From positions 1 through 7,002 of the forward strand of contig NW_021829019.1 of the NCBI RefSeq assembly GCF_006345805.1: a DNA stretch of 7,002 nucleotides, in the 5' to 3' direction. How positions within the stretch are numbered: the first letter of the stretch is position 1; every line of letters begins with the position of its first letter. Below, one piece after another: positions 367 through 6,972 of the stretch. Below the pieces are notes generated by a model that saw only the letters and a list, made by a program, of their open reading frames with translations, was not told the DNA's origin and did no database searches. Origin of the DNA: Octopus sinensis (lineage: Eukaryota). A program made the position numbers and the translations under genes.

Positions 367-480
367 CGTCACGCACACACACACAAACTTCACACACACG
401 CGCGCAAAAACACACACGCACACACACGGACACATGCACGCACACACATATATTACACTTATATATATGCGTGTATATAC

Positions 481-548
<68 letters not shown>

Positions 549-803
549 CGTGATATATAAATTTATGTGCATATACAATATAACATATATATAAATATAT
601 ATAATATATATATGTATGTATATGTATATATGTATATATATATATATATGCGCGTGTGTATGTGTGTATCCATATGGATATATATATATATATATATATA
701 TATCCATATATACACACACACAGACACACTCACATATATGTATATATACATATATATATAAATACATACACACCACACACACACACACATATATATATAT
801 ATG
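367..803. repeat. Compound (CA)n/(TA)n/(TG)n microsatellite field
   Basis: Alternating runs of CA, TA and TG dinucleotides are read directly. They account for the Y/I/C/V/H/T-rich ORFs on both strands. Confidence 0.95.
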
Positions 804-1044
804 AGTATATATGTATTTTATTGTGTGTGGGGAGAGTCATTCTTTTTTAGTGCCCTATAAATTTAACACACTCACTGGTCCAGTTTCCACTCATCTCCTT
901 ATTTAGTTTTCCGAAAGTTATCGTTGCGTCTTGCACCCCTATCAATAGTCATTGACTCTGTCCGTTGTCGGAGCTACGTCCTTTTGCTCGTTTGTACGCA
1001 TGCGTCTGGGTCGATGATGCACACACATAAATACACACACATGT

Positions 1045-2014: not shown

Positions 2015-2500
2015 GGAAAGGGCGAGGAAAAGACCGAAAGTACGCGCGCGTGTGTGTATATTTGCGTGTACTTCTGTATGAGTATGTGTGTGCGAGTGTG
2101 CTCGAGCCAGTGAATAACTAATTGTTATATAATTCAATACGTGACTGGCTAGACTCTGTGTTCTTGCATACGAATGTATTATGTATTTTTAATACAAACT
2201 CAATCCACCCCACACACTTAACCGAGCGCACCAGCAGAAATACATTTGACGTAAAACATTGGTAAAATTTAAATATGAATGTCGTTCATTCATAAACAAT
2301 TATGGATCGGAAATGTTTAACAAATTCACAGTCAGGGTAAACAGACACACAGGAAAATGAATGGCGAGGGGAATAAAACTGTATATTTGTTTAGTAAACT
2401 TACAATATGGTGTTTGATTATATCACGCGGATTAGCTGTTGTTGTTGTTGTTGTTGTGTTGTTGTTGTTGTTGTGCTGTTGTTGTTGTTGTTGTTGTTGT

Positions 2501-2693
2501 TAAGCAACAAGATGGGTAAGGGTGATTAGGTGAGGGTCTAGGGCTTAGGGGCGGGAGACCCCAGACCTTGTAAAAAAAAAGAATTTGGTCTTCATGTTGT
2601 AGTCGAGGGCTCTTCGTTGACGCCCAACACCACTGGAAGGTGGCCCTCGAAGTCGCTGGAAATGGAAATCTCCAGGTCCAAATTCTTGGACGG
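2501..2693 (-). repeat. Unit 1 of tandem duplication
   Basis: Aligns by eye to 2731-2922. There are 4 substitutions in 2601-2693, 3 in 2501-2550, and a diverged A-rich middle. Confidence 0.95.
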
Positions 2694-2730
2694 CTGCTGC
2701 TGCTGGTGCTGTTCTTGTTGTTGTTGTTGT

Positions 2731-2922
2731 TAAGCAACAAGACGGATAAGGGTGATTAGGTGAGGGTCTAAGGCTTAGGGCAAGAGACCCCAGACCTTGG
2801 AAGAAAAAATAAAACGGTTGTCTTGTTGTAGCCGAGGGCTCTTCGTTGACGCCCAACACCACTGGAGGGTGGCCCTCAAAGTCGCTGGAAATGGAGATCT
2901 CCAGGTCCAAATTCTTGGACGG
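2731..2922 (-). repeat. Unit 2 of tandem duplication
   Basis: Has the same start (TAAGCAACAAGA) and end (TTCTTGGACGG) on + as unit 1. Confidence 0.95.
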
Positions 2923-3100
2923 TTGGATTAGATGTGGGGCGGTGGTTCCGAAATTCGTTGTGTTGAGAAATATAGAGTCAGTGATTAACTATCAGTATTC
3001 ACTATACCTCATACGTACACATACACACATGATGATATATGTAAATACATATATACATGCATACAGAAATAAATACATATATACATAAAAAACATATATA

Positions 3101-3519
3101 CTCTTTTATTCTTTTATTTGTGTCAGACATTTGACTGCGGCCATTCTGGAGCATCGCCTTTACACGAACAAATCGACCCCAGGATTTATTCTTTCTAAGC
3201 CAAGTACTTATTGTATCGATCTCTTTTGTGGAAATGCTATGTTACGGGGACGTAACAAGACCAACATCGGTTGTCAAGCGGTGGTAGGGGAGAAAAACAC
3301 AGACACACTAACATGCACACACACACACTTACACTCATATATATATATATATATGTATATGTCGGGCTTCTCTCAGTTTCCGTATACCAAATCTACTCAC
3401 AAGGCTTTGGTCCACCCGAAGTTATAGTAGAAGACACTTGCCCAAGGTGCCACGCGGTGGGACTGAACCCGGAACCATGTGGTTGATAAGCAAGCTACTT
3501 AGAACAACACAGCCACTCC

Positions 3520-3524
<5 letters not shown>
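3101..3524 (-). mobile_element. tRNA-derived SINE (octopus-type), essentially full length
   Basis: On the minus strand: A-box-like TGGCTGTGTTG (3505-3515) and B box GGTTCAGTCCC (3459-3469), body GTGGCACCTTGGGCAAGTGTCTTCTACTAT, an internal (TA)/(TG) microsatellite at about 3300-3360, and 3' end GGCCGCAGTCAAATG...AATAAAAGAATAAAAGAG. It is homologous to two other copies in the window. Confidence 0.9.
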
Positions 3525-3596
<72 letters not shown>

Positions 3597-3619
3597 GGAG
3601 AGTGTGTGTGTGTGTGTGT
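3525..3619. repeat. Compound (TA)n(TG)n(GA)n(GT)n microsatellite
   Basis: Four consecutive dinucleotide runs read directly. Confidence 0.95.
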
Positions 3620-3756: not shown

Positions 3757-4030
3757 TAAGGCTTCACTTCCACACGCGCCAGCTTAATTTAATTCGTCCG
3801 TAGTCGAAAGACACCTGTTTTCTTCCATGGAATCTAATGCTCTTAGCTTATTATTCCCTTGGAGCTGGCCAGATTGGAGCAATCTCGAGAATAACCAGCC
3901 GAAATTGCAAAGATACTCTGGAATTCGACTGAGGAAAGAAAACTCAGAATGATCCATCCTTGTTCTTGATTATCCCATTTTGTATCATCTGTCTGGATGT
4001 ATAGCGTTCTTGTCCCATTTTTAGTATCTT
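3757..4030 (-). mobile_element. Dispersed repeat copy A (internally deleted), family unassigned
   Basis: The reverse complement of 3869-3908 matches 4218-4257 at 35/40. Homology continues through ...GCATTAGAT(T)CCATGGAAGAAA and through GTCTTTCGAC...GCTGGC. Confidence 0.75.
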
Positions 4031-4032
4031 TA

Positions 4033-4095
<63 letters not shown>
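4031..4095. repeat. (TA)n microsatellite between the inverted repeat copies
   Basis: 65 bp TA run with one interruption at 4039-4040. Confidence 0.97.
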
Positions 4096-4097
<2 letters not shown>

Positions 4098-4620
4098 TAA
4101 ACAGTAAAAATAATTACAGACATGGACAAGAACATGAAACACCACAGAGACGACACAAGAACCACAGGACGGGACATTCGAAGCCCTCAGTCATCAGTCA
4201 AGAACCAGATCATCTTAGCAATTTCGGCTGATTAATCTTGAGATTGCTCCGATATGGGCAGCCCGCCATGGGAAATCTAAGCCAAGCGCATTAGATCCAT
4301 GGAAGAAAGCTTCGAATGTATACAACACGAGGACGGAAAACGAACGAAGTACACGAACAAAAATACAGAATACGTGACACCAATAAGAATACAAAAACGT
4401 AAAAACAATAACGGTAAAAATAAAAAACAGAACAAAACCAGGACGTAGGACAAGGGTCTTTCGACAGGACGAGTTGAGTTTGGGGCTGGCTTATGAAGTT
4501 GTGCCTAATGGCCGCAGGGAGACGAACAAATACGTGTTGCTTCGGCGACTGCTGGAACGAAAAGAGCGCTCAACAGTGGCTAGCGGTCACGTGAGAACAA
4601 AGACAGGAGAAAGGGACAGA
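4096..4620 (+). mobile_element. Dispersed repeat copy B, family unassigned; 3' end approximate
   Basis: Homologous to copy A in opposite orientation. It begins immediately after the TA tract and grades into a purine-rich tract. Confidence 0.7.
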
Positions 4621-5192: not shown

Positions 5193-5578
5193 GAAAGAAG
5201 GCTTGAAAATGCGATTTTAAAGATGTTTATTCACTTGACTGGTTTCACTTTGTTTAGAAAAAGATTGTCAAACGTAAAATGTAAAGCTTTGTAAAAGCTT
5301 TGTTGTGTTAAGTACTGGTTGTCACAAAAATATTAAAATACATATATACATAATAATAAGAAAATGTTAAAAACAGTTTACAAGAAAGTATTTAAGTAAG
5401 TGTTCAACAATAAGTATTAAGATTTCAATAAAAATCATATTTGTTTGTTTGGTAGTATATATATACACAGAAGGAGATATATTAAAGAATTTGCAAAAAA
5501 TTGGTGAGGAACCTACCTGTCTTTTTGGCATTTTTTCTGTCTTGTGTGTAGCAAGGAAATGTTTGCTATTTTAAGGGA
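5193..5578 (+). repeat. Left inverted arm
   Basis: Runs from GAAAGAAGGCTTGAAAAT to GTTTGCTATTTTAAGGGA. It has two extra segments (5227-5268 and about 5495-5529) that are absent from the right arm. Confidence 0.93.
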
Positions 5579-6360
5579 CCACACACACAAACTAAAAAAG
5601 ACCCACACATATGCACACAATACAATCCCAACAATCACAACACACACTCACAAACACACATACACACAAGAATGCACACACACAATCACACACACCTCCC
5701 CGACAAATACGAGACACATAGACACTCACGCAAACACCCACACATATATACACACACTGCACTAACAATACAAACAAAACAAATCACTTACAAATACAGC
5801 ACACGCACATGTGCACATACACACCCGGAAAGTACATAAAGCATCCACATATATACACTCACACACAAAGGCATACTCAATACCAACATGTACAAAACGC
5901 ACTTGCACACACATACACACCACCCGGATAAACCCAACACCCACGGATGCGCACAGAAACCCTGATAAATACAACACACTCACACACATACATACCCACA
6001 CACACATGCATATGCACCCTTACACACATACGTTTGCACACACACACTCAAGTACACACACATAACATACCACCAAAACAAAACAACAAACGTACACACG
6101 TACATACAGACGAACACATAAACACACGCGAATAAACACATACACACATGCGCACACACAACACCCTAACAAATATTAATCACGCACATACACACACACG
6201 AACGTGCACACATATACACACACCAACCTACAAAATATAAAACACACAGAAGCCCATACACACAAGCCACAATAAACTCTAGGACCAATCAAAAACGGCC
6301 CACACACACAAACACATGTATATACACACATACAAAGAGAGGTACAAAGAGACACACACA
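5579..6360. repeat. Cryptic/degenerate (CA)n-rich low-complexity core
   Basis: Strong C+A strand bias with short CA runs and no clean period. It yields H/T-rich and C/V-rich pseudo-ORFs. Confidence 0.85.
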
Positions 6361-6485: not shown

Positions 6486-6802
6486 TCCCTTACAATAGCA
6501 AACATTCCCTAGCGACACACAAGACAGAAAAAAATAGCAAATTATTAAATATATCTCCTTCTGTGTGTATGTATATATACTTCCAAACAAACAATTTTTA
6601 TTGAACTCCTAATACATTTTGCTGAATACTTTCTTAAATACTTTCTTGCAAACTGTTTTTAACATTTTCTTATTATTATCAAAGAATGTATAACTGTATT
6701 TTAATACTTTTGCGACAACCAGTATTTAACACAACAAAGCTTATACAAAGCTTTTCATTTTACTTTTGACATCTTTAAAATTGAATTTTCAAAACTTCTT
6801 TC
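6486..6802 (-). repeat. Right inverted arm
   Basis: Runs from TCCCTTACAATAGCAAAC to ATTTTCAAAACTTCTTTC on +, the reverse complement of the left arm. Confidence 0.93.
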
Positions 6803-6850
6803 CTTCGTGCGGTATCTTAAAACTTTACTTGTTATATATATATATATATA

Positions 6851-6968
6851 GGTGCAGGGACTGTCTGTGCGGTAAGAAGCTTAGTTCCCAAGAACATAGT
6901 TCCGGGTTCAGTCCTATGCGTGGCACCTTGGGTATCTTCTGCTATAACCTCGGGTCAATCAAAGTTTT

Positions 6969-6972
<4 letters not shown>
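6851..6972 (+). mobile_element. 5' part of the same tRNA-derived SINE, running into (TA)n
   Basis: GGTGCAGGGACTGTCTGTGCGGTAAG head, B box GGTTCAGTCC (6905-6914), GCGTGGCACCTTGGG...CTATAACCTCGGGTC...AAAGTTTTGTGA. It matches the reverse complement of about 3396-3524. Confidence 0.88.

What the first reader, a model, noticed from the sequence alone, without database searches (positions are those of the whole stretch)
2429..2935. Two identical-ended units with (CAA)n tails inside a single target-site duplication
Read on the minus strand, the layout is TSD - unit(192 bp) - (CAA)n/(CAG)n - unit(193 bp) - (CAA)n - TSD. The flanking repeat GGATTAG(C/A)TGT matches at 10/11, and its last bases overlap the tail, as expected from target-primed reverse transcription with microhomology. 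Both units start at the same base (CCGTCCAAG...), which is unlike random LINE 5' truncation. This points to a defined short RNA (SINE-like or retrozyme-like) inserted as a dimer by template jumping or from a multimeric/circular template. A later local duplication is the alternative. There are no Pol III A/B boxes at the unit start, so it does not look like an ordinary tRNA-SINE. Simple-repeat tails such as (CAA)n are known from some non-LTR clades (e.g. RTE), which suggests a mobilising partner.
Basis: partly seen in the sequence, partly recalled or inferred. Interest (0 to 1): 0.72.

Follow-up and report, generated by a model that had tools for sequence, protein, structure and literature searches.

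The report
Tandem pair of octopus retroposons
Two head-to-tail copies of a short, (CAA)n-tailed mobile element sit inside one 7-bp target-site duplication; the element is a real but ordinary octopus retroposon family, and a second independent dimer in Octopus sinensis shows that such pairs form repeatedly.

Summary
On the minus strand the layout is CTAATCC, a 193-nt unit, a 36-nt (CAA)5…(CAG)4 linker, a second 193-nt unit, a 67-nt (CAA)n tail, then CTAATCC. The units are 90% identical and start at the same base. A flanking repeat this good arises by chance about 0.5-0.8% of the time.

The unit is not single-copy. Its only database relative is an Octopus sinensis gene model whose last exon holds another head-to-tail dimer with unrelated flanks. 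All four monomers share the same 5' end. None has Pol III A/B boxes, a hammerhead core or a poly(A) signal. All carry an internal T-run (T4/T6 to about T16) that would stop Pol III.

Six sites group the monomers by locus and none by left/right position, so the dimers arose independently and there was no Alu-like dimeric master.

Best reading: a non-autonomous, promoter-less retroposon mobilised by target-primed reverse transcription through its (CAA)n tail. The dimer most likely formed in one event by template switching. Sequential insertion into the first copy's tail, or a later 229-bp duplication, cannot be excluded.

"Retrozyme-like" fails its defining test. The mobilising partner (LINE or Penelope-like element) is unidentified. 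I could not measure genome-wide copy number, 5'-end spectrum or empty sites, because no cephalopod genome was searchable.

The parts
2925..2931 (-). 5' copy of the target-site duplication, CTAATCC. It extends to 2935 as ACATCTAATCC, matching 10/11.
   Evidence: Chance estimate 0.5-0.8%.
2732..2924 (-). Unit 1, the upstream monomer: 193 nt, 51% GC, starts AACCGTCCAAG, ends GTCTTGTTGCTT.
   Evidence: nhmmer E=5e-71 against the 4-monomer profile, which includes this monomer.
2696..2731 (-). Tail of unit 1, acting as the inter-unit linker: (CAA)5 GAA CAG CAC (CAG)4, 12 in-phase triplets.
2503..2695 (-). Unit 2, the downstream monomer: 193 nt, 90% identical to unit 1, with the same first base.
   Evidence: nhmmer E=7e-73, profile includes this monomer.
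2436..2502 (-). Terminal tail: (CAA)7 CAG CA (CAA)5 CA (CAA)6 CAG. It shares the (CAA)n-CAG-CAC interruption with the linker.
2429..2435 (-). 3' copy of the target-site duplication, CTAATCC, directly after the last CAG of the tail.
2799..2813 (-). Internal T-rich tract of unit 1 (TTTTATTTTTTCTT). The equivalent tract is T9 in unit 2 (about 2571-2579) and T13-T16 in the O. sinensis copies. In the sense strand it is a Pol III terminator.
2724..2740 (-). Predicted terminal hairpin UUGUUG-CUUAA-CAACAA. It pairs the conserved 3' end of the unit with the first tail repeats, and the same hairpin occurs in unit 2 at about 2495-2511. It is predicted only.
   Evidence: All four copies keep it, but there are no compensatory changes.

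Best explanation
The region is a head-to-tail dimer of a roughly 193-nt non-autonomous retroposon family of octopus. Each unit carries its own 3' (CAA)n microsatellite tail.

Shown:
- The family is dispersed. A second locus with unrelated flanks exists in O. sinensis.
- Monomers have a fixed 5' end.
- They lack a tRNA/Pol III head and contain an internal Pol III terminator.
- The window copy is bracketed by one 7-bp TSD.

Inferred:
- The RNA is made by read-through or Pol II transcription.
- It is copied into the genome by target-primed reverse transcription. A nicked target 3' end anneals to the (CAA)n tail. The ACA just upstream of the 5' TSD copy overlaps the tail register.
- The reverse transcriptase comes from an unidentified autonomous element, either a microsatellite-tailed LINE or a Penelope-like element.
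- The dimer was most probably made in that same event. After reaching the 5' end of one RNA, the RT continued on the (CAA/CAG)n tail of a second RNA from the same source, or on a tandem transcript. This gives TSD-unit-tail-unit-tail-TSD.
- From the inter-unit divergence (JC 0.106, about 0.053 per unit) and the calibration in PMC13282606, the event is roughly 15 My old. That is close to the SINE/LINE burst the paper places at JC 0.065.

Sub-confidences: 'dimer of a mobile non-autonomous retroposon inside one TSD' about 0.85; 'made in a single retrotransposition event' about 0.4-0.45.
For: - Architecture and TSD.
- Family membership: a HMMER search of 1.84 billion representatives with the ORF spanning the dimer found one real relative, P0002. 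P0002 is uncharacterized protein LOC118761090 of Octopus sinensis. Its locus L001 holds unit A (23697-23851, then 24062-24101, split by a roughly 210-bp nested insert), a roughly 100-nt degenerate CAN linker, unit B (24203-24400) and a short CAA tail, with unrelated flanks.
- Same 5' end in 4/4 monomers.
- Same source and same age for the window pair: six sites group (u1,u2) against (A,B); private changes are 8 and 8; both tails share the (CAA)n-CAG-CAC interruption.
- No promoter or ribozyme.
- Head-to-tail multicopy insertion is a known outcome for Penelope-like elements and their non-autonomous derivatives (PMC8557442, PMC11167929). RT template switching is invoked for SINE chimeras (PMC4824008).
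Against: - Only two loci (four monomers) could be examined, and both were ascertained in ways that favour dimers.
- Nothing in the sequence separates a one-step dimer from a second insertion into the first tail, because an inner TSD made of CAA repeats would be invisible.
- A 229-bp duplication using the CAA microhomology between '...TCCAA|CC' and the tail is also not excluded.
- The linker is much less pure than the terminal tail (5/12 triplets CAA against about 18/21). That would also fit an older upstream tail.
- No TSD is recognisable at the O. sinensis dimer.
- The partner element and the transcription mode are unobserved.
- The predicted RNA structure has no covariation support.
Confidence: 0.45

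Rival explanations
1. Two sequential insertions. Unit 1 inserted first and created the CTAATCC duplication. A second copy from the same active subfamily was later primed on the (TTG)n strand of unit 1's tail. The old tail was split into the present linker and the distal part of the terminal tail, and the inner TSD is hidden in the CAA repeats.
For: - The layout is exactly what tail-targeted TPRT predicts.
- The linker is more degenerate than the terminal tail, as expected if it is older.
- The terminal tail is built of three CAA blocks separated by out-of-phase CA dinucleotides, which could be a new tail joined to the remnant of the old one.
- Own knowledge: Alu elements preferentially insert into the poly(A) tails of older Alus, and several LINE clades target microsatellites.
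- Dong-R4, a clade known for microsatellite targets, has the most recently active LINE insertions in O. vulgaris (PMC13282606).
- Recurrence at L001 is easily explained.
Against: - The two units have equal numbers of private substitutions (8 and 8) and share six variants. This requires the second hit to follow quickly and from the same source.
- Unit 1 itself did not insert into a CAA tract, so the machinery is not strictly CAA-specific.
- No CAGCAGCAG block, the expected duplicated inner target, is present distal to unit 2's tail.
- In L001 the downstream unit B is not younger than A. Private changes are 15 against 6, about 8-9 events if adjacent changes are counted once.
Confidence: 0.3
2. 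A single monomer inserted. Later, a 229-bp segment (unit plus proximal tail) was tandemly duplicated by replication slippage or unequal exchange, using the CAA microhomology between the 5' junction (…TCCAA|CCGTCC) and the (CAA)n tail.
For: - Period-229 tandem repeat with 1.9 copies.
- Equal private divergence of the two units.
- The shared CAG-CAC tail interruption shows the proximal tail was copied with the unit.
- A 3-nt CAA microhomology is available at exactly the right place.
Against: - The duplication would have to start within about 2 nt of the element's own 5' end.
- The same unit-exact junction is seen at an independent locus, L001 unit B, which is unlikely for a random duplication.
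- After CAG-CAC the two tails differ: (CAG)4 against (AAC)n.
- Ascertainment bias weakens the recurrence argument.
Confidence: 0.2
3. The dimer is itself the transposing unit: an Alu-like dimeric master whose two arms are joined by a CAA-rich linker. Every insertion would then be a dimer.
For: - Both loci available are dimers inside, or compatible with, a single insertion.
- A single TSD surrounds the window dimer.
Against: - None of the informative sites groups left arms against right arms across loci. Six sites group the two arms of each locus together. Dimerisation happened separately in each lineage.
- Linker lengths differ threefold, 36 against about 100 nt.
Confidence: 0.04

Closest known systems
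Microsatellite-tailed ('stringent') SINEs and their LINE partners, for example the eel UnaSINE1/UnaL2 pair, mollusc SINEs ending in (CA)n, (CAAA)n or (CACT)n (PMC4758252), and the octopus OR1/OR2/OK SINEs (Ohshima & Okada 1994, cited in PMC4824008)
   Same: It is a short dispersed element with a variable-length simple-repeat 3' tail and a short TSD. A predicted stem-loop lies upstream of the tail. Tail/target microhomology is consistent with TPRT.
   Different: It has no tRNA, 5S or 7SL head and no A/B boxes. An internal T-run (T4/T6 to about T16) would terminate Pol III. No LINE sharing its 3' end could be looked for. No CORE-type similarity was noted, but this is only from my memory of the CORE sequence; no SINE domain was compared with a tool.
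LP-SINEs of gastropods and bivalves: SINE-like elements with a LINE-derived, presumably Pol II, 5' domain (PMC4758252)
   Same: It is a mollusc element with no tRNA head. It has TSDs and terminal tandem repeats, and Pol II or read-through transcription is plausible.
   Different: LP-SINEs have a demonstrable LINE-derived head and a poly(A) signal before the repeats. Here there is no AATAAA/ATTAAA, and the head could not be compared with any LINE.
Penelope-like element insertions and their non-autonomous derivatives: pseudo-LTR partial tandems, 'multicopy head-to-tail insertions', microsatellite bias (PMC8557442, PMC11167929, bioRxiv 10.64898/2026.07.22.740005)
   Same: There is a head-to-tail tandem inside one insertion site and an association with a microsatellite. 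Penelope-like elements are abundant and recently active in octopus (PMC13282606). Naiad-type elements lack hammerheads, as this unit does.
   Different: The upstream copy here is full-length, not 5'-truncated. No 30-40-bp 'tail' extension is detectable in the flanks (flank-versus-unit similarity p=0.4-0.56). Each unit ends in its own (CAA)n. Similarity to a Penelope-like element's 3' end could not be tested.
Metazoan non-LTR retrozymes (PMC7229834)
   Same: They are 150-450-bp units in head-to-tail dimers or multimers, they are non-autonomous, and their TSDs are longer than 4 bp.
   Different: The defining type I hammerhead ribozyme is absent. GC content is 51%, against the low GC reported for retrozymes. 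The units are separated by microsatellite tails.
Alu-in-Alu-tail insertions and L1-mediated template-switch chimeras (own knowledge; template switching for SINE genesis is discussed in PMC4824008 and PMC5729268)
   Same: Both produce head-to-tail pairs joined through the 3' tail of the upstream copy, within or next to one TSD.
   Different: The tail is (CAA)n rather than poly(A), and the partner RT is unknown.

Membership tests
SINE in the strict sense (Pol III-transcribed, LINE-mobilised; SINEBase definition, PMC3531059) | Short, dispersed, multi-copy | tested here: met
   There are two unrelated loci and four monomers: the window and O. sinensis L001. The true copy number is unknown. No further copy was found in about 40 kb of other octopus DNA.
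SINE in the strict sense (Pol III-transcribed, LINE-mobilised; SINEBase definition, PMC3531059) | Internal Pol III promoter (tRNA, 5S or 7SL head with A and B boxes) | tested here: not met
   No A or B box within 2 mismatches in any of the four monomers. A tRNA-SINE in L001 gives an exact A box and a 1-mismatch B box in the same scan. ARAGORN and Rfam were negative, but they also miss that control.
SINE in the strict sense (Pol III-transcribed, LINE-mobilised; SINEBase definition, PMC3531059) | Sense strand free of Pol III terminators (T>=4) before the 3' end | tested here: not met
   The mid-unit T-runs are T4+T6 (unit 1), T9 (unit 2) and T13-T16 (O. sinensis).
SINE in the strict sense (Pol III-transcribed, LINE-mobilised; SINEBase definition, PMC3531059) | 3' simple-repeat or A-rich tail, and a TSD | tested here: met
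   A (CAA)n tail is present on 4/4 monomers. A 7-bp TSD brackets the window dimer (p about 0.005-0.008). No TSD is recognisable at the older L001 dimer.
SINE in the strict sense (Pol III-transcribed, LINE-mobilised; SINEBase definition, PMC3531059) | 3' region shared with an autonomous LINE partner | not testable with these tools
   No cephalopod genome or repeat library is searchable. LINE remnants in L001 show no similarity to the unit.
Metazoan non-LTR retrozyme | Type I hammerhead ribozyme in each repeat | tested here: not met
   There is no CUGANGA core on either strand of 2429-2935. Rfam gives no hammerhead or other ribozyme hit at E<=10 in the window or in the L001 dimer.
Metazoan non-LTR retrozyme | Head-to-tail tandem units of 150-450 bp | tested here: met
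   Period 229, 1.9 copies, and a second dimer in L001.
Metazoan non-LTR retrozyme | Expressed as a circular RNA | not testable with these tools
   No RNA data were available.
Penelope-like element (PLE)-type insertion or non-autonomous PLE derivative | Partial tandem with a 5'-truncated upstream copy (pseudo-LTR) | tested here: not met
   Both monomers are full-length. Full head-to-tail multicopies are, however, reported for non-autonomous Chlamys elements (PMC8557442).
Penelope-like element (PLE)-type insertion or non-autonomous PLE derivative | [quoted passage not shown] | tested here: inconclusive
   The flanks show no significant similarity to the unit: window p=0.56 and 0.42; L001 3' flank p=0.056.
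Penelope-like element (PLE)-type insertion or non-autonomous PLE derivative | 3' end similar to an autonomous PLE | not testable with these tools
   No octopus PLE sequences were at hand.
LP-SINE (LINE-promoter SINE, PMC4758252) | 5' domain derived from a LINE 5' end | not testable with these tools
   No LINE library. There was no coding or LINE homology for the two reading frames searched.
LP-SINE (LINE-promoter SINE, PMC4758252) | Poly(A) signal upstream of the terminal repeats | tested here: not met
   No AATAAA or ATTAAA in the sense strand.
Alu-like dimeric SINE (dimer as master copy) | Arm-specific diagnostic positions shared between loci | tested here: not met
   No site supports a left/right grouping, and six sites support a by-locus grouping.
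5'-truncated LINE 3' fragment | Scattered 5' ends and continuity with LINE ORF2 or 3' UTR | tested here: not met
   4/4 monomers share the same 5' end. There was no RT or ORF2 homology in the HMMER search. The sample size is very small.

The most novel reading that the evidence does not exclude
The unit is a ribozyme-free counterpart of a retrozyme. It would be a promoter-less RNA of about 230 nt whose 5' end and (CAA)n 3' end are joined in a circular or concatemeric template. A Penelope-like or LINE reverse transcriptase would copy it by rolling-circle or serial template jumping, so that insertions are born as head-to-tail multimers inside one TSD. That would be a new class of multimer-inserting non-autonomous retroelement in cephalopods, and a possible seed of 229-bp satellites.
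Probability: 0.1. Interest if true: 0.65.

Novelty: new member of a known kind. Interest (0 to 1): 0.3.

Why it matters
SINEs make up about 11-12% of octopus genomes, and nearly all recently active SINE families there are still 'unclassified' (PMC13282606). A clean example of one such family helps to classify that fraction. This one shows a fixed 5' end, no Pol III promoter, a microsatellite tail, a single TSD and recurrent dimerisation.

It also points to a testable question. Which reverse transcriptase (microsatellite-tailed LINE, Dong/R4-type or Penelope-like) mobilises promoter-less short RNAs in cephalopods? And do tail-mediated template switches seed tandem repeats?

In itself the locus is an old (roughly 15 My), decaying insertion with no sign of host function.

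Tried and rejected
1. Six-frame concatenated translation of both units as a protein query. I replaced it with a HMMER search using the 121-aa ORF, which found P0002.
2. Searching with P0002 returned only itself.
3. The third protein search used the LINE RT ORF of L001, hoping for multi-copy octopus loci. It returned 2522 RTs, but none of the listed hits looks like an octopus copy. The best full-length identity was 64%. One 81% hit is a 1.5-kb contig labelled as a Herbaspirillum MAG. One fetched locus, L002, is not octopus.
4. Exact-pattern scans of viral, metagenome and prokaryote contig collections with two conserved patterns gave 0 hits.
5. Window ORFs are not on record in the gene-position index.
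6. Full-text and supplement searches for conserved 12-13-mers of the unit gave only chance primer matches.
7. tRNA origin: ARAGORN and Rfam were negative, but they also fail on a bona fide tRNA-SINE control. I therefore rely on the box scan.
8. Hammerhead and other ribozymes: rejected. An HDV-like fold at the 5' end was checked by eye only. The 5' end forms a plain 6-bp hairpin.
9. Terminal inverted repeats (DNA transposon or MITE) and Helitron ends: none seen by eye.
10. The idea that the flanks are remnants of an older copy or a Penelope-like element 'tail': not significant.
11. Homology of the tails extending into the flanks, which would indicate a segmental duplication including flank: none.

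Full report
**1. Observation**

Read on the minus strand, the region contains the following parts.
- CTAATCC at 2931-2925.
- A 193-nt unit at 2924-2732.
- A 36-nt linker of 12 in-phase triplets at 2731-2696: (CAA)5 GAA CAG CAC (CAG)4.
- A second 193-nt unit at 2695-2503.
- A 67-nt tail at 2502-2436: (CAA)7 CAG CA (CAA)5 CA (CAA)6 CAG.
- CTAATCC again at 2435-2429.

Tandem Repeats Finder gives period 229, 1.9 copies and 90% matches. The units match at 173/192 aligned bases. Both units start at the same base (A[A/G]CCGTCCAAG).

I sampled random position pairs from this repeat-rich window. An exact direct repeat of at least 7 nt lying within 3 nt of both boundaries occurred in 0.5-0.8% of pairs. 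The TSD is credible, though it is a single instance.

**2. Is the unit a family?**

No other copy lies in the window. The public DNA collections offered (viral, JGI metagenome, prokaryote genomes) gave no hit with two conserved patterns. I therefore used proteins as a proxy.

The 121-aa ORF running through unit 1, the linker and half of unit 2 was searched with HMMER against 1.84 billion representatives. It found one genuine relative, P0002. The other four hits are unrelated repetitive proteins. P0002 is 'uncharacterized protein LOC118761090 [Octopus sinensis]'.

Its gene locus L001 is on contig VCDQ01005406.1 of GCA_006345805.1. It contains a second head-to-tail dimer:
- Unit A at 23697-23851 and 24062-24101, split by a roughly 210-bp nested insertion.
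- A degenerate CAN-rich linker of about 100 nt.
- Unit B at 24203-24400.
- A short CAA/CAC tail.

The flanks are unrelated to those in the window. So the unit is a dispersed element, and the window comes from Octopus or a close relative. A second repeat in the window (3105-3529) has at least 8 partial copies in L001 at 75-87% identity, which supports this.

**3. Anatomy of the unit** (4-monomer alignment A2)

- All four monomers begin at the same position: AACCGTCC, AGCCGTCC, AACTGTTC and ACC--ACC.
- All four end in GTCTTGTTGC(T/A)TA(A/G) followed by CAA-type repeats.
- No A or B box occurs within two mismatches in any monomer. A canonical tRNA-derived SINE from L001 (12260-12500, minus strand) scores an exact A box and a 1-mismatch B box in the same scan.
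- ARAGORN and Rfam are negative. They also miss that control, so they carry little weight on the tRNA question.
- The middle of the sense strand holds a T-run: T4+T6, T9, and about T13-T16. This is a Pol III terminator.
- There is no AATAAA or ATTAAA and no hammerhead core CUGANGA on either strand.
- The two sense frames searched show no LINE ORF homology.
- The consensus RNA folds better than shuffles (-59.9 kcal/mol, z = -3.2).
- It has two 5' hairpins and a 10-bp hairpin, GGUCUGGGGU…GCCCUAGACC.
- It also has a terminal hairpin, UUGUUG-CUUAA-CAACAA, that uses the first tail repeats.
- None of the 49 predicted pairs shows a compensatory change, so the structure is only a prediction.

**4. How the four monomers relate**

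- Six sites group (u1,u2) against (A,B). By my reading of the alignment, three of these are CpG sites where parallel decay is likely.
- No site groups left monomers against right monomers.
- Private changes are 8 (u1), 8 (u2), 6 (A) and 15 (B). Counting adjacent changes once, by eye, B has about 8-9 events.
- An ancient Alu-like dimeric master is therefore not supported. Dimers formed separately in each lineage, from monomers of the same source and apparently the same age.
- The two window tails also share the (CAA)n-CAG-CAC interruption. The proximal tail was inherited together with the unit.
- The inter-unit distance is JC 0.106, or 0.053 per unit. On the calibration in PMC13282606 (JC 0.065 is about 18 My), this corresponds to roughly 15 My. 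That is close to the SINE/LINE expansion the paper reports for O. vulgaris. This age is an inference.

**5. Mechanism**

What is shown: a short promoter-less element with a microsatellite tail, a fixed 5' end and a 7-bp TSD. That is the signature of retroposition by target-primed reverse transcription using someone else's reverse transcriptase. The ACA overlap between the tail register and the base just outside the TSD fits primer-tail annealing.

What is inferred is how the pair arose. Three routes give the same picture.

(a) One event. The RT reaches the 5' end of one RNA and continues on the tail of a second RNA, or copies a tandem or circular template. In favour:
- A single TSD.
- Equal ages.
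- Shared variants.
- A shared tail interruption.
- Unit-exact junctions at two independent loci.
- Head-to-tail multicopy insertions are a known property of Penelope-like elements and their non-autonomous derivatives (PMC8557442, PMC11167929). These elements are active in octopus (PMC13282606).

(b) Two events, with the second insertion primed in the first copy's tail. In favour:
- The linker is far less pure than the terminal tail.
- The terminal tail is composite.
- There are analogies with Alu-in-Alu-tail insertions and microsatellite-targeting LINEs (own knowledge).
- Dong-R4 is the LINE group with the most recent insertions in O. vulgaris (PMC13282606).
Against: equal ages, and the absence of a duplicated CAG block.

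(c) A later 229-bp tandem duplication through CAA microhomology. Against: the junction would have to coincide with the element's own 5' end, and it does so twice.

I rank these (a) about 0.4-0.45, (b) about 0.3 and (c) about 0.2. Both loci were ascertained in ways that favour dimers, so the true frequency of dimers is unknown.

**6. Comparison with known families**

The element works like a microsatellite-tailed SINE. It fails the strict SINE definition because it has no Pol III head and carries an internal terminator.

It resembles mollusc LP-SINEs (PMC4758252) in lacking a tRNA head. It has no poly(A) signal, and its head could not be compared with any LINE.

It resembles metazoan retrozymes (PMC7229834) in unit size and tandem arrangement, but it lacks the defining hammerhead.

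It resembles Penelope-like element insertions in being a tandem within one site. However, both copies are full-length and no 'tail' extension is detectable.

The RTE suggestion is untested. The one RTE-like 3' end in L001 ends in TGATGAATGATGAT. RTE-2_OV is reported to have a microsatellite 3' UTR, but its motif is not given in the text (PMC9115989).

**7. Limits**

No cephalopod genome, repeat library or RNA data could be queried.
- Copy number.
- The genome-wide 5'-end spectrum.
- The monomer-to-multimer ratio.
- The partner element.
- The orthologous empty site.
- Circular RNA.

**8. Verdict**

This is a real and neatly preserved, but ordinary, feature. It is an old head-to-tail dimer of an octopus non-autonomous retroposon inside one target-site duplication. 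It is a new member of a known kind, and quite possibly already present in automated libraries among the many 'unclassified SINE' families (893 recently active ones are listed for O. vulgaris). Interest is modest at 0.3.

The most novel reading still open is a ribozyme-free, multimer-inserting retrozyme-like element. It has about a 10% chance.

Noticed in passing
window 3105-3529 (+); partial inverted copy at 6833-6972: This is a different and much more abundant interspersed repeat. It begins …TTTGACTGCGGCCATTCTGGAGCATCGCC and ends in (AT)17 at 3525-3558. At least 8 full or partial copies lie in the 34-kb O. sinensis locus L001 at 75-87% identity. Within the window, 3397-3545 matches 6972-6833 in inverted orientation (77%).
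   Followed up: partly
window 5193-5578 versus 6486-6802: A pair of long inverted repeats: 76% identity over about 330 bp by BLAST, with cores of 83-91% over 86-109 nt. About 0.9-1.3 kb lies between the arms. They are either two inverted copies of another repeat family or a foldback-type element. No copy was seen in L001.
   Followed up: no
window 3864-3960 versus 4166-4262: 97-nt inverted arms (75% complementary) flank the (TA)33 array at 4031-4095. This is a MITE-like or hairpin-forming structure centred on a microsatellite.
   Followed up: no
window 370-816, 1584-1898, 1966-2014, 3525-3619, 5630-6160: The microsatellite load is very heavy: (TA)n, (CA)n, (GA)n, and a (TATC)67 array at 1633-1898. 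All Rfam 'mir-297', 'mir-466' and 'mir-5014' hits (E down to 1e-10, all below gathering score) fall in these tracts. They are low-complexity artefacts, not miRNA genes.
   Followed up: partly
L001 23429-24436 (gene LOC118761090, protein P0002): The last coding exon of this O. sinensis gene model is a 335-aa ORF. About 700 bp of it is the retroposon dimer with its nested insert, and its upstream end overlaps short matches to the abundant repeat above. The 'protein' is probably a repeat-derived annotation artefact or an exonised repeat.
   Followed up: partly
L001 about 23852-24061: A roughly 210-bp insertion is nested in unit A. It is flanked by ACCTA on both sides and contains three GGGGTTCCGC motifs and similar inverted ends. 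It looks like a small DNA-transposon (MITE) insertion.
   Followed up: no
L001 12260-12500 (-): A canonical tRNA-derived SINE with A box TGGCCAAGTGG and B box GTTTCGATTCC. Neither ARAGORN nor the Rfam scan detects it. This is a caution that those tools do not exclude tRNA-derived SINE heads.
   Followed up: yes
L001 about 7640-8120 (-): RTE-like LINE 3' ends whose ORF (…TTVEQ*) runs straight into a TGATGAATGATGAT microsatellite. The C-terminal coding segment is tandemly triplicated.
   Followed up: no
L001 2943-3000, 3984-4053, 5412-5462, 8785-8834, 31577-31641 versus L002 10807-10875: Five segments of 50-70 nt in the octopus locus are 81-88% identical to the 3' end of a PHD-finger LINE from an unrelated ENA assembly. 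They are probably tails of an octopus SINE family borrowed from that LINE clade.
   Followed up: no
protein P0105: A 353-aa reverse transcriptase is 81% identical to the octopus LINE ORF of L001. It is deposited as a hypothetical protein of a Herbaspirillum MAG on a 1.5-kb contig. This is most likely cephalopod DNA binned into a bacterial MAG.
   Followed up: no
L001 24426-24445 (3' flank of unit B): Directly after B's tail the flank reads CCAGTGGTGACCGGG. This resembles unit positions 60-74, CCAGTGGTGTCGGG (p=0.056 against shuffles). It is either chance or a short third, truncated unit.
   Followed up: partly
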